Of a stretch of DNA of 64,000 nt, positions 41,330 to 44,199 are shown one piece after another; positions within the stretch are counted from its first letter, which is position 1, and every line of letters begins with the position of its first letter. The DNA lies in assembly GCA_025594325.1 (NCBI GenBank), contig JANHCV010000005.1:62001-126000 (forward strand), in the 5' to 3' direction. Position numbers and translations under genes: made by a program. The notes below the pieces were generated by a model. That model saw only the letters and a list, made by a program, of their open reading frames with translations. It had not been told where the DNA came from and did not search any database. This DNA comes from Blastocladiella emersonii ATCC 22665. Its lineage: Eukaryota > Fungi > Blastocladiomycota.

Positions 41330-44085
41330 ATGCGCGCACCAGCAACACCAAGAGCCGGCCTGCTCGCCGCTGGCCTACTCGCCGCCGCCCTCATCGCCGT
41401 GCTCGTTGGCTCGGCCCGCGCCGCCGAGTACAAGCTCGGTCTCGCGCTCCCGCTCACGGGCCCCGACCGCGAGCTCGTCACCGCCATCAAGGAGGTCATC
41501 GAGCTCGGCATGGAGGACGTGAACGCGTGGGCGCGCACCGACTTTGCCGGCAACACCTTCTCGCTCAAGGTGTACGACACGCAGGACCACGAGTCGGCCG
41601 CCGTCGCCGCCATGTTCGACGCGTCGCGCACCGGCATCCTCGGCATGATCGGCGAGTTCGACTCGTCGCCCACCATCCCCATGGCGCTCGCCGGCAACCA
41701 GTTCAACATGTGGCAGTGCTCGGGCTCCGTCACCACCCCAACGCTCTCCGACAAGTCCGAGTACCAGCGCTTCTTCCGCACCCTGCCCGCCGACCACAAC
41801 CAGGGCGCCGTCCTCGCCTACTGGGTCCGCAACATGGGGTGGCGCAGCTGCGCCATCCTCGCCGTCTCCAACAGCTACGGCGAGGGCATCACCCAGCGCT
41901 TCCTGCAGACCGCCAGCGAGGTCGGCATCCGCGTCGAGACGGTCCAGAGCTTCACGCCCAGCAACAACGCCCTGTCCAACGGGTACAAGGTGCCCATCGA
42001 CGGCATCAAGAACTCGGGCACCCGCATCGTCCTCTTCTTCGGCTCCGAGGGCGACCTCATCGACATCTCCAAGGAGGCCCGCAAGCAGGGCATCATGGGC
42101 AACAAGGAGTGGGTCTGGATCGGGTCCGACGGCATCGCCACCATCGCCCAGGACTCGGCCAAGGCCCGCTTCACCGCCGCCGAGCTGTCCGTGACCGACG
42201 GCATGTTCTACCCGTTCTTTGCCGAGAAGGGCGCCAGCTTCCTCTCGTTCCTCGACCGTTACAAGCAAAAGTACAAGCGCTCCGACACCCCCTTCTTCGG
42301 CACCACCACGCTCGACTGCGCGCACGGCCTCGCCCGCGGCCTCGCCGCCATGACCAAGCGCAACGGCGAAAACGCGACGCTGTCGCGCGACTACCGCAAC
42401 GCGTCCATCAAGGACTTCCTCGTCAACTTCACCTCGCCCACCACCGGCACCGTCAACTTTGACGCCAACGGCGACCGCGTCGGGCCCTACTACGTCTACA
42501 ACGTGTTCGGCGGCAAGATGTCGGTCGCGTACACGGTCGACGCCGCCGCCAAGTCCATCACGCCGTCGCCCGACTACAAGGCCAAGTTCTTTGGCGGGTC
42601 GACCGACGTGCCGCTCGACCGCCCCGTGCAGTCGCGCAAGTACCCGGTCTACACCGACTTCGGCGCCATCATCGTCCTCGCCCTCACGGCAATCCTCGCC
42701 ATCACCATCGTCGCCACCGTCGGCTACCTGTTCGTGCACCGTGGCCACAGCAACGTCAAGAACATGTCGCTCCCCTTCGTCGTCATGATCGCCGTCGGCC
42801 TGCTCTTCGTGCTCGCGTCCACGGTCCTCTGGATCGGCGAGCCCTCGGCCGCCACGTGCGGCGCCGGCCGCTGGACGTTTGCTCTCGGCTACGAGCTCGT
42901 CGTCAGTGCGACTGCTGCGGTACGTTCTCCCTCGTGTTGCTCGTCCCGCGAATTGTGTGCTGACCCACGTCGCCGTTTCTCCCTTCGTAGAAATCCTTCC
43001 GCATCTATGCCATCTTCGACAACAGCACGCTGCGCAAGCTCAACAAGCTGACCAACTCGTACCTGCTCCTCGGGTGCTCGCTCATCGTCGCGGTGCAGAT
43101 CGGCATTCTCGTCGTGTGGTCGGTGATCGCGCCGCTCCGCCCGCGCCAGCGCAGCACCTTCACGTCCTACTATTTCGAGTGCGCGTCCGACTCGGCCAAC
43201 CTCGACCAGGCCTTCTACATCGTGTCGCTCGTCTACAACGGCCTGCTGCTCGTCGTCGTGTCGTACCTCGCCTACAAGACGCGCAAGGCGTACTCGGCGT
43301 TCCGCGAGTCGCGCTTCATCTTCTACTCGGTGCAGAACATTTTCCTGTCGGGGCTCGTCGTCTCGCCGTTCCTGTTCATCGTCGGCGGCGACTTCAACCT
43401 CGGCGCGTATTACATCCGGTCCGCGACCATCCTGTACGCGGTCGGGTTCACGTACGCGTGCCTGGTCGGGCGCATCGCGCTCGGCCTGTACATGGCCATC
43501 ACCAAGTCGTCCAACACGGGGGTCAAGATGAACCTCAGCAACGGCGGCAGCTCCAGCGGCGGCGGGATCAGCACGGGCGAGGTGATGCCCGGCAAGCCGC
43601 AGACCATGGCGGGCAAGTACCCGATCAAGCTCGGCAACCGCCTGTTCGAGACGTGGCACACGCACCGGCTCACGCTGTTCGCGCTCGAGGGGTACCTCGG
43701 CATGACGCGGCTCACCAACAACACGGAGCAGGGCAAGCTGTTCAAGCTGCGCTCGATCCAGTTCGACCCGACGCCGTCCGCGTACCCGCTCTGCATCGAG
43801 ATCCGCGCCGACTCGACCTCCTACATTGTCCAGTTCAACAAGGAGGACGACAAGGCCAAGTGGGTCCGCGCCCTCTCGGTCCACTGCCTCGTCATGTCCA
43901 AGTCGTCGGCTAACAAGTCGACCATGGGGCCCAACGGACTCTCGACCGCCGGACCTGCGGGTACCCTCGGCGGCGGCGCAGCTACCTCGCGCATGCAGTT
44001 CTCCATGGCCGGCGCCCACGGTCACGGCGCCACGAGCCAGATCACGTCCCAGTACGGCGGCGGGTTCAAGTCGACCAACGGCTAG
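41330..44085 (+). CDS. Class C (GABA-B/glutamate-like) GPCR: signal peptide, Venus flytrap domain, 7TM, C-terminal PH-like domain
   Basis: VFT motifs LGLALPLTG, GEFDSS, PTLSDKSEYQRFFRTLPAD, GWRSCAIL..YG. Intron 42920-42990 restores TM3 ...ATAA-KSFRIYAIF. Seven hydrophobic helices; ECL2 Cys (YFECAS); TRKAYSAFRES before TM6. No cysteine-rich linker. Probable 5'UTR intron at 40835-41196. Confidence 0.93.
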
Positions 44086-44199
44086 ACGGCGCCGCGTTGC
44101 CGCCGCCCCCGCCATCGCTCAGGTGCAGGAGACTCGGTCGTGTAGATTATTGTCATCAATCAGTATATGTCCCATTAGTGTGTCGTGAGCTCGCCCCGA

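What the first reader, a model, noticed from the sequence alone, without database searches (positions are those of the whole stretch)
41330..44085. Class C GPCR with a PH-like domain fused to its cytoplasmic tail
Seen: after TM7 and a Gly/Ser linker there is a compact ~95-aa beta-rich segment (43600-43890): GKYPIKLGNRLFETWHTHRLTL..GYLGMTRL..GKLFKLRSIQF..LCIEIRADSTSYIVQFNKEDDKAKWVRALS. Its features fit a PH fold: K..W..R in beta1/beta2, and a final strand followed by an amphipathic helix with the invariant Trp. Known: animal class C GPCRs (mGluR, GABA-B) have no PH domain; class C receptors occur in zoosporic fungi but not in Dikarya. The flytrap keeps Ser/Thr at the positions that bind the amino-acid backbone (GEFDSS, CSGSVT) and has no Cys-rich linker, as in GABA-B. 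Inference: an amino-acid or nutrient chemoreceptor with a built-in phosphoinositide- or G-beta-gamma-binding effector module, possibly used in zoospore chemotaxis. I do not know of this architecture being described.
Basis: partly seen in the sequence, partly recalled or inferred. Interest (0 to 1): 0.8.

Follow-up and report, generated by a model that had tools for sequence, protein, structure and literature searches.

The report
Fungal class C receptor with PH tail
This gene of the water fungus Blastocladiella emersonii encodes a glutamate-receptor-type (class C) cell-surface sensor, probably for amino acids, whose inner tail carries a genuine PH docking domain, a design shared by dozens of receptors across its phylum and not found described in the papers searched.

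Summary
Observation confirmed. Window 41330-44085 (+) is a two-exon gene (71-nt GT..AG intron at 42920-42990). Its 894-aa product is identical to the hypothetical protein H9P43_004687 of Blastocladiella emersonii ATCC 22665.

Layout: signal peptide, Venus-flytrap domain (ANF_receptor, E 8e-42), no Cys-rich domain, class C 7TM (7tm_3, E 2e-42), a ~30-aa Gly/Ser linker, a PH domain (aa 738-835, window 43612-43905) and a 59-aa low-complexity end.

The PH call rests on several results:
- A weak Pfam PH hit here (20 bits, cut-off 25.1), and 32 bits in a Catenaria paralogue.
- A family profile that finds only PH domains in the PDB.
- An AlphaFold2 model (pLDDT above 90) with seven strands and a C-terminal helix.
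- Foldseek's top 50 matches are all PH; VIA Z reaches 12.3.

All named receptors carrying this tail are from Blastocladiomycota (five genera), about 40 sequences in all. In the closest subfamily the PH domain is the best-conserved part (63-88% identity, against 37-61% for the rest).

The flytrap keeps all five alpha-amino-acid-binding residues of mGlu receptors. The canonical phosphoinositide motif is not kept: both beta-2 basic positions are His. I therefore favour a protein-docking adaptor over a specific lipid sensor; this is inferred, not shown.

No paper found describes the fusion. The scan noted the same architecture at other places in this genome. Verdict: new variant of a known kind.

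The parts
41330..42919 (+). Exon 1 (aa 1-530): signal peptide, flytrap, stalk, TM1-TM3
   Evidence: ORF list; Pfam ANF_receptor 55-392 and 7tm_3 profile positions 5-89; 100% identical to P0001.
42920..42990 (+). Intron, 71 nt, GT..AG with a CTGAC branch-like site at 42960
   Evidence: Sequence. Removing it restores the frame and the continuity of 7tm_3, and the spliced CDS equals P0001.
42991..44085 (+). Exon 2 (aa 531-894 plus stop): TM3 end to TM7, linker, PH domain, C-terminal tail, in one unbroken ORF
   Evidence: 364/364 identical to P0001:531-894.
41330..41425 (+). Predicted signal peptide (aa 1-32; hydrophobic core, then ARA just before the mature end)
   Evidence: Read from the translation; not run through a predictor.
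41429..42514 (+). Venus-flytrap ligand-binding domain (aa 34-395). Alpha-amino-acid signature residues: S112 (41663), T135 (41732), D155 (41792), Y183 (41876), D267 (42128)
   Evidence: Pfam ANF_receptor E 8.4e-42 and Peripla_BP_6 E 9e-19. phmmer alignment to mGlu4/6/8 is identical at all five columns. The residues' role is taken from PMC2680970.
42515..42646 (+). Cys-free stalk (aa 396-439); no Cys-rich NCD3G domain
   Evidence: 0 Cys in 44 aa; no NCD3G hit.
42656..43515 (+). Class C seven-helix bundle (aa 443-705; interrupted by the intron)
   Evidence: Pfam 7tm_3 E 1.7e-42. The AF2 model shows the helices at pLDDT 80-95. PDB hits are mGlu2/3, GABA-B2 and CaSR at E 1e-11 to 1e-8, with the KTRK..F.E..FI stretch conserved.
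43516..43611 (+). Gly/Ser-rich flexible linker (aa 706-737)
   Evidence: pLDDT below 50 for model residues 277-304 in the 7TM+PH model. 70-76% identical in the three closest relatives, 30-49% in the rest of the close subfamily, and 7-19% in the distant paralogues.
43612..43905 (+). PH domain (aa 738-835): seven strands plus a C-terminal helix. Family-invariant W752 and C798; near-invariant K743, G764, G778, Q811 and W821
   Evidence: Pfam PH E 9e-4. Family profile against the PDB gave 20 of 20 hits in PH domains. AF2 pLDDT above 90. Foldseek top 50 all PH. VIA Z up to 12.3. Column statistics.
43906..44082 (+). Low-complexity Gly/Ser/Ala/Thr C-terminal tail (aa 836-894), ending in a short motif conserved in close relatives (SQ.xSQY)
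   Evidence: Alignment A1; pLDDT below 50.

Best explanation
The gene encodes a class C (glutamate-family) G-protein-coupled receptor of Blastocladiella emersonii with a PH domain built into its cytoplasmic tail.

Shown: the layout is signal peptide, Venus flytrap, Cys-free stalk, 7TM bundle, flexible linker of about 30 aa, PH domain, and a disordered end. The PH tail is shared by about 40 receptors, and every named one is from Blastocladiomycota.

Inferred mechanism: an L-amino acid or a close derivative is held by the five conserved backbone-binding residues (S112, T135, D155, Y183, D267) and closes the flytrap of a receptor dimer. The 7TM bundle rearranges and activates a heterotrimeric G protein, as in mGlu, CaSR and GABA-B receptors. 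The PH domain hangs on its linker just under the bundle and the inner leaflet. It most likely acts as a built-in docking adaptor that holds a conserved cytosolic partner at the receptor (G-beta-gamma, a G-alpha, a small GTPase or another effector), helped by a modest positive charge (+5) towards the membrane.

My odds for the PH role are about 0.45 for a protein adaptor, 0.25 for a specific lipid sensor, 0.1 for an intramolecular regulator, and the rest other. A role in amino-acid chemotaxis or settlement of zoospores is plausible but untested.
For: Gene model: the spliced CDS equals P0001, 894 aa.

Class C identity: ANF_receptor E 8e-42 and 7tm_3 E 2e-42. The best PDB matches are mGlu, CaSR and GABA-B receptors for both the flytrap and the 7TM.

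Amino-acid site: in the phmmer alignment to mGlu4, all five positions are identical. Their spacing in the mGlu4 chain (23, 20, 28, 82) equals that of mGlu1 S165/T188/D208/Y236/D318, which PMC2680970 names as the alpha-amino-acid motif. 18 of 20 alignable full-length paralogues keep S, T/S, D, Y/F, D/E (the N-terminally truncated P0003 keeps the three it covers). Allomyces zoospores are chemotactic to amino acids, and that paper names no receptor (bioRxiv 10.1101/165027).

PH fold: Pfam PH E 9e-4 here and 32 bits (above the 25.1 cut-off) in paralogue P0016. The tail alone finds a fish ACAP2 PH at E 7e-6 among 1.84 billion proteins. A family profile hits 20 PDB sequences, all PH domains (ASAP1, TAPP1, GRK2/3, ACAP1, CERT). 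AF2 gives pLDDT above 90 with seven strands and a helix. Foldseek's top 50 are all PH. VIA Z is 10.7-12.3.

Adaptor rather than lipid sensor: in the close subfamily the PH is the most conserved segment, 63-88% identity against 37-60% for the flytrap and 44-61% for the 7TM. The canonical basic residues are missing.

Flexible tether: the linker has pLDDT 29-34 in the 7TM+PH model.
Against: No ligand, G-protein coupling, partner, localisation or expression data exist for this protein or any relative. The Pfam PH score of this copy is below the gathering cut-off. High conservation alone does not prove a protein partner. K743 is nearly invariant, and several basic residues (R747, K782, R784) and two His sit near the usual lipid-binding end, so non-canonical or pH-dependent lipid binding is not excluded. 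Structural matches include lipid-binding and protein-binding PH domains with tied scores, so they do not discriminate. The signal peptide and the dimerisation are assumed from family knowledge.
Confidence: 0.8

Rival explanations
1. The PH domain is a specific phosphoinositide sensor or anchor. It binds PI(4,5)P2, PIP3 or another anionic lipid and so sets where in the zoospore membrane the receptor sits or whether it can signal.
For: Closest sequence and fold matches include lipid-binding PH domains: ASAP1 with PI(4,5)P2, TAPP1, DAPP1, ArhGAP9, Akt. K743 at the end of beta-1 is kept in 37 of 41 members. The domain has net charge +5 plus 3 His. The tether keeps it next to the inner leaflet.
Against: The K-Xn-(K/R)-X-R motif is not met. 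The residue after W752 is His in 16, Arg/Lys in 10 and Ile in 5 of 41 members. Two residues further, where TAPP1 and ASAP1 have Arg, it is His in 23 and Asn in 7 of 41. The position that my gap-free counting from the helix Trp (Akt sequence recalled from memory, not aligned with a tool) equates with Akt Arg86 is Tyr/Trp/Phe in 37 of 41. Lipid-binding PH domains usually conserve only the pocket, whereas here the whole domain is 63-88% conserved.
Confidence: 0.25
2. The PH domain is an intramolecular regulator. It docks on the cytoplasmic face of its own or the partner protomer's 7TM bundle and blocks or gates G-protein access until the flytrap closes.
For: Covalent tethering about 30 aa from TM7. 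The linker is 70-76% identical in the three closest relatives. Class C tails are known regulators (general knowledge).
Against: In the AF2 model of 7TM + linker + PH, the linker has pLDDT 29-34, and the PH pLDDT falls from above 90 to 68-86 rather than rising, so no confident docked pose is predicted. This is weak evidence: the model is a monomer and no PAE was available. The linker is not conserved in distant paralogues (7-19%), although the PH is kept.
Confidence: 0.1
3. The tail is an annotation or reading artefact: two genes merged, or a tail that is not translated with the receptor.
For: Some relatives clearly are mis-modelled. P0016 has a second tail copy at its N-terminus, P0038 is 2664 aa, and several Allomyces models are truncated.
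Against: Here TM3 to TM7, the linker and the PH lie in one uninterrupted ORF (42991-44085) with no stop or splice needed. The same order 7tm_3 then PH is found in 37 homologues from five genera.
Confidence: 0.02

Closest known systems
Metazoan metabotropic glutamate receptors and CaSR (class C GPCRs)
   Same: ANF-type flytrap with the same five alpha-amino-acid-binding residues. 7tm_3 bundle with the conserved K..RI..IF (TM3/ICL2) and KTRK..F.E..FI (ICL3/TM6) stretches.
   Different: No NCD3G Cys-rich domain between the flytrap and TM1. The tail carries a folded PH domain, whereas animal class C tails are, to my knowledge, largely unstructured and use short docking motifs instead. Sequence similarity is only E 1e-16 to 1e-11.
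GABA-B receptor subunits
   Same: The flytrap joins the 7TM directly without a Cys-rich domain. GABA-B1 aligns over nearly the whole of exon 1 (query 16-523, E 4e-10). An Allomyces relative is even named 'GABA-B receptor subunit 2' by its source.
   Different: GABA-B tails carry, to my knowledge, a coiled coil for heterodimerisation, not a PH domain. The ligand-site signature here is the full alpha-amino-acid one. The 7TM is no closer to GABA-B2 than to mGlu2/3.
Blastoclad and chytrid 'Glutamate family' GPCRs catalogued by Krishnan et al. 2012 (PMC3251606)
   Same: This gene belongs to that expansion (78 members reported in Allomyces macrogynus). That paper already reported ANF-type N-termini and the absence of NCD3G outside Metazoa.
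   Different: That survey and later ones (PMC3971589; eLife 2025, PMC12716839) analysed N-terminal or extracellular domains only. None mentions a PH domain in the tail.
GRK2/GRK3 C-terminal PH domain
   Same: A PH domain working at an activated GPCR. The family profile hits GRK3 (E 0.004) and GRK2 PH (E 0.03), and VIA gives Z 11.3-11.5. De Mendoza et al. do not list Fungi among the lineages with GRK-like proteins, so a receptor-borne PH could fill a related niche.
   Different: In GRK2 the PH is part of a soluble kinase recruited in trans by G-beta-gamma and PIP2. Here it is covalently part of the receptor and no kinase is attached. G-beta-gamma binding is untested.
Oomycete and Dictyostelium GPCR-bigrams (GPCR-PIPK/RpkA, GPCR-AC, GPCR-TKL, some with DEP)
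   Same: A 7TM receptor of a zoosporic or amoeboid microbe fused at its C-terminus to a cytosolic signalling domain; lineage-specific and expanded (PMC6033456, PMC5784254).
   Different: Bigrams are defined by a catalytic accessory domain. PH is not catalytic, and neither bigram paper mentions a PH tail, class C or glutamate-family receptors, or blastoclads or chytrids.

Membership tests
Class C (glutamate-family) GPCR | 7tm_3 (PF00003) seven-helix domain above Pfam's gathering score | tested here: met
   146.3 bits against a cut-off of 33.5, aa 443-689. The AF2 model shows the helices.
Class C (glutamate-family) GPCR | Extracellular periplasmic-binding-protein-type flytrap (ANF_receptor) | tested here: met
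   143.9 bits against a cut-off of 25.4, aa 55-392.
Class C (glutamate-family) GPCR | Actual G-protein coupling and obligate dimerisation | not testable with these tools
   Only conserved ICL2 and ICL3 motifs were seen.
mGluR/CaSR/T1R subgroup | Cys-rich NCD3G domain between flytrap and TM1 | tested here: not met
   No NCD3G hit; 0 Cys in the stalk aa 396-439.
mGluR/CaSR/T1R subgroup | Five-residue alpha-amino-acid recognition motif (mGlu1 S165, T188, D208, Y236, D318) | tested here: met
   S112, T135, D155, Y183 and D267 are identical to mGlu4 at the aligned columns, with matching spacing.
GABA-B receptors | C-terminal coiled coil for heterodimerisation | tested here: not met
   After TM7 the model shows a disordered linker and then a beta-sandwich PH; there is no long helix.
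PH domain (Pfam PF00169, clan PH-like) | Pfam PH score above the gathering cut-off (25.1 bits) | tested here: not met
   This copy scores 17.1-20.1 bits, E 0.008 to 9e-4. Paralogue P0016 scores 32.0 bits, and 8 of 30 family members match at E 0.01 or better.
PH domain (Pfam PF00169, clan PH-like) | Fold: seven-stranded antiparallel beta-sandwich capped by a C-terminal helix | tested here: met
   AF2 gives strands 22-31, 40-47, 52-57, 66-69, 73-76, 85-90 and 93-98 and helix 102-115, with pLDDT above 90. Foldseek's top 50 are all PH at probability 1.00. VIA Z is 12.3, rmsd 2.6 over 95-97 residues.
PH domain (Pfam PF00169, clan PH-like) | Conserved Trp in the C-terminal helix | tested here: met
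   W821 is kept in 39 of 41 family members and aligns with the Trp of TAPP1 and ASAP1.
Phosphoinositide-binding PH subclass | K-Xn-(K/R)-X-R motif in beta-1/beta-2 | tested here: not met
   The sequence is K743-X9-H753-X-H755. The final Arg of TAPP1 and ASAP1 aligns with His755, which is His in 23 and Asn in 7 of 41 members.
GPCR-bigram | C-terminal catalytic accessory domain | tested here: not met
   The only domain after the 7TM is PH; there is no catalytic Pfam hit. Definition taken from PMC6033456.

The most novel reading that the evidence does not exclude
The receptor-borne PH domain is a new transducer element of GPCR signalling. It binds G-beta-gamma or another G-protein-pathway component directly at the receptor. 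Blastoclad class C receptors would then carry in cis the recruitment function that animals supply in trans through GRK2-type PH domains or Homer-type scaffolds. The roughly 40-member family would be the long-sought amino-acid chemoreceptor set of zoospores.
Probability: 0.2. Interest if true: 0.8.

Novelty: new variant of a known kind. Interest (0 to 1): 0.6.

Why it matters
I found no GPCR described in the papers searched with a folded PH domain in its own tail. Here that design is fixed across a fungal phylum, expanded into dozens of paralogues, and in one subfamily more conserved than the ligand-binding or membrane domains. Strong selection therefore acts on something the tail does.

It offers a natural experiment on how receptors can hard-wire a downstream docking step. 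GRK-like kinases were not listed for Fungi (PMC3971589).

It also supplies concrete candidates for the amino-acid chemoreceptors of blastoclad zoospores. That behaviour has been known since Machlis 1969, and the paper I read on it names no receptor (bioRxiv 10.1101/165027).

Practically, Pfam-threshold surveys miss the domain: it scores below the cut-off in most members. That probably explains why it has gone unremarked.

Tried and rejected
1. Reading the region as one ORF. The first ORF runs to a stop at 43051 and the second is in another frame, so a 71-nt intron is needed.

2. Long antisense ORFs (41375-42748 and 42889-44115, minus strand). I treated these as the usual by-product of 65% GC coding DNA. 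I did not search them, and the plus-strand gene explains the region fully.

3. A single-sequence PDB search with the tail gave only a weak, non-PH top hit (Diels-Alderase, E 0.004) and a PH hit at E 0.9. The family profile was needed.

4. Searching with the flytrap and the 7TM found only 9 and 12 proteins, because the word index reaches close relatives only. No chytrid or non-blastoclad full-length relative could be compared this way.

5. Looking for an OpuAC-type receptor next to AMAG_14327 to test the PH tail on another ectodomain. The locus held only two ANF-type tandem genes, so that lead from earlier scan notes stays untested.

6. Fixed docking of the PH on the 7TM: not supported by the AF2 monomer model.

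7. Supplementary tables of the genome paper are not held, so I could not see whether its GPCR table lists this gene's domains.

8. dN/dS between B. emersonii and B. britannica was not attempted, as I expected synonymous sites to be saturated. Per-domain amino-acid identity was used instead.
Full report
**Gene and organism.**
The ORF list shows a 573-aa ORF from 41330 and a second ORF in another frame ending at 44085. The sequence between them holds a 71-nt intron, 42920-42990, with GT..AG ends and a CTGAC branch-like site. Splicing gives 894 aa. The flytrap half is 100% identical to P0001, 'hypothetical protein H9P43_004687 [Blastocladiella emersonii ATCC 22665]'. Exon 2 is 364/364 identical to the same protein, and the spliced CDS translates to it exactly. 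Across the junction the Pfam 7tm_3 match continues from profile position 89 to 93.

**Receptor part.**
- Pfam gives ANF_receptor (aa 55-392, E 8e-42), Peripla_BP_6, and 7tm_3 (aa 443-689, E 2e-42).
- There is no NCD3G hit, and the 44-aa stalk has no Cys. This agrees with Krishnan et al. 2012, who found NCD3G absent from all non-metazoan members and reported 78 glutamate-family receptors in Allomyces and none in Dikarya (PMC3251606).
- Against solved structures the flytrap is nearest to mGlu4/6/8, CaSR and GABA-B1 (E 1e-16 to 1e-10). The 7TM is nearest to mGlu2/3, GABA-B2 and CaSR (E 1e-11 to 1e-8). It is therefore a deep class C branch rather than a member of one animal subgroup.
- In the alignment to mGlu4, S112, T135, D155, Y183 and D267 are identical to the receptor's Ser, Thr, Asp, Tyr and Asp.
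- Their spacing in the mGlu4 chain (23, 20, 28, 82) equals that of mGlu1 S165, T188, D208, Y236 and D318. PMC2680970 describes these as the five main residues that hold the alpha-amino and alpha-carboxyl groups of the ligand.
- 18 of 20 alignable full-length paralogues keep S, T/S, D, Y/F, D/E (the N-terminally truncated P0003 keeps the three positions it covers).
- An amino acid or a close derivative is thus the most likely ligand. This is inferred, not shown.

**The tail is a PH domain.**
- Pfam PH matches this copy only weakly: 20.1 bits and E 9e-4 on the tail alone, against a cut-off of 25.1.
- phmmer of aa 714-850 against 1.84 billion representative proteins gave 31 hits. All but one are blastoclad proteins; the exception is the PH region of a fish ACAP2 at E 7e-6.
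- One Catenaria paralogue (P0016) passes Pfam's PH cut-off with 32 bits. UniRef calls three short fragments of the family 'PH domain-containing protein'.
- A profile of 29 tails hits 20 PDB sequences at E 1 or better, and every one is a PH domain: ASAP1, TAPP1, GRK3, GRK2, ACAP1, CERT, DAPP1, Tiam and others.
- AlphaFold2 on that alignment gives pLDDT above 90 for residues 21-120, with seven strands and a C-terminal helix.
- Foldseek's first 50 PDB matches are all PH domains at probability 1.00.
- VIA-align gives Z 10.7-12.3 at 2.3-3 Å rmsd for compact PH domains.

**Distribution.**
- With a profile of the tail, every class C relative I had fetched carries it after the 7TM, except one 705-aa Catenaria protein that looks like a shortened gene model and one 601-aa Allomyces cluster member. 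In total 37 sequences have 7TM followed by PH.
- The sources are Blastocladiella emersonii and B. britannica, three Allomyces species, Catenaria anguillulae, Sorochytrium milnesiophthora and Coelomomyces lativittatus.
- Apart from the fish ACAP2 PH and one unnamed Logan contig, nothing outside Blastocladiomycota reached E 1e-3.
- Every full-length member checked is of the ANF type. The A. macrogynus entries without a flytrap look like truncated gene models, because their cluster-mates from other Allomyces species are full length.
- Tandem pairs occur, for example AMAG_14326 and AMAG_14327.
- Notes from this scan report the same tail at other places in this genome, including on receptors with betaine-type or sugar-type ectodomains. 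I could not test those.

**What the PH domain is likely to do.**
Three observations bear on this.

1. Conservation. Among the nine closest relatives the PH domain is 63-88% identical to this protein. The flytrap is 37-60%, the 7TM 44-61% and the far C-terminus 13-45%. In distant paralogues the PH domain falls to the level of the rest (23-37%).

2. The lipid pocket.
   - K743 at the end of beta-1 is nearly invariant.
   - The two beta-2 positions that are basic in TAPP1 (KRR) and ASAP1 (QRR) in the HMMER alignments are His753 and His755 here.
   - Family-wide, the first of these is His in 16, Arg/Lys in 10 and Ile in 5 of 41 members. The second is His in 23 and Asn in 7 of 41, with Arg rare.
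   - The K-Xn-(K/R)-X-R signature, which is established knowledge for high-affinity phosphoinositide binders, is therefore not met.
   - Counting back from the helix Trp without gaps, using the Akt1 sequence as I recall it and not a tool alignment, the position matching Akt Arg86 is aromatic in 37 of 41 members.
   - Net charge is +5 with three His, so weak electrostatic or pH-dependent membrane contact remains possible.

3. The tether. In a model of 7TM + linker + PH the bundle is confident (pLDDT 80-95), but the 28-residue linker scores 29-34 and the PH domain gains nothing. No fixed docking is predicted.

Taken together, I favour a tethered protein-docking adaptor. A specific lipid sensor comes second and an intramolecular gate third. 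None of these is shown.

**Context.**
Allomyces zoospores swim to and settle on sources of amino acids, and the paper I read on this names no receptor (bioRxiv 10.1101/165027). De Mendoza et al. list GRK-like proteins only for Holozoa, dictyostelids, heterokonts and haptophytes (PMC3971589).

**Novelty check.**
- The surveys of non-metazoan GPCRs analysed N-terminal or extracellular domains. None mentions a PH tail: PMC3251606, PMC3971589 and PMC12716839.
- The GPCR-bigram papers list catalytic C-terminal domains and DEP, not PH.
- The B. emersonii genome paper speaks generally of GPCRs diversified by domain recombination. Its main text mentions neither PH nor pleckstrin, and its supplement is not held.
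- A full-text search for GPCR + 'pleckstrin homology' + Allomyces found nothing.
- The parts are known and the receptor family is catalogued. The fusion appears undescribed, but it is visible to automated annotation in a few members.

**Verdict.**
The functional interpretation is plausible but untested, and the phosphoinositide option is weakened. I class it as a new variant of a known kind, interest 0.6.

Noticed in passing
window 44041-44082 (aa 881-894): The otherwise low-complexity C-terminal end finishes in a short motif (SQ.xSQY, then K-S-T-x-G). It is shared with the Catenaria relative and partly with the B. britannica one. It may be a trafficking or docking motif.
   Followed up: no
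P0016 (Catenaria, 986 aa) residues 48-138; P0038 (B. emersonii H9P43_002530, 2664 aa): P0016 has a second copy of the PH tail before its flytrap. P0038 carries the receptor only in its last ~850 aa. Both look like neighbouring genes merged by gene prediction in tandem arrays.
   Followed up: partly
L002:2874-5373 (Allomyces macrogynus GG745362.1): There is an unannotated 2.5-kb gap upstream of AMAG_14326, whose model (627 aa) lacks a flytrap. Its A. arbusculus cluster-mate (896 aa) has one, so the missing exons probably lie in the gap.
   Followed up: no
P0051-P0054 (Allomyces, 921-982 aa): In this sub-clade the PH tail matches the profile in two pieces about 20-45 aa apart, i.e. an insertion about halfway through the profile (around positions 58-62). 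The flytrap has lost two of the five amino-acid-binding residues, Asp155 to Asn and Asp267. These may be split-PH receptors for a different ligand.
   Followed up: partly
L001:4001-7188 (B. britannica MU624603.1): The closest B. britannica relative spans 3188 nt for 886 aa, implying roughly 500 nt of introns, against a single 71-nt intron in B. emersonii. Its listed neighbours (Peptidase_M48, Arf, TPT, Peptidase_M3) were not compared with this window.
   Followed up: no
window 41375-42748 and 42889-44115, minus strand: Long antisense ORFs (457 and 408 aa) overlap the gene. This is typical of GC-rich coding DNA, and they were not examined further.
   Followed up: no
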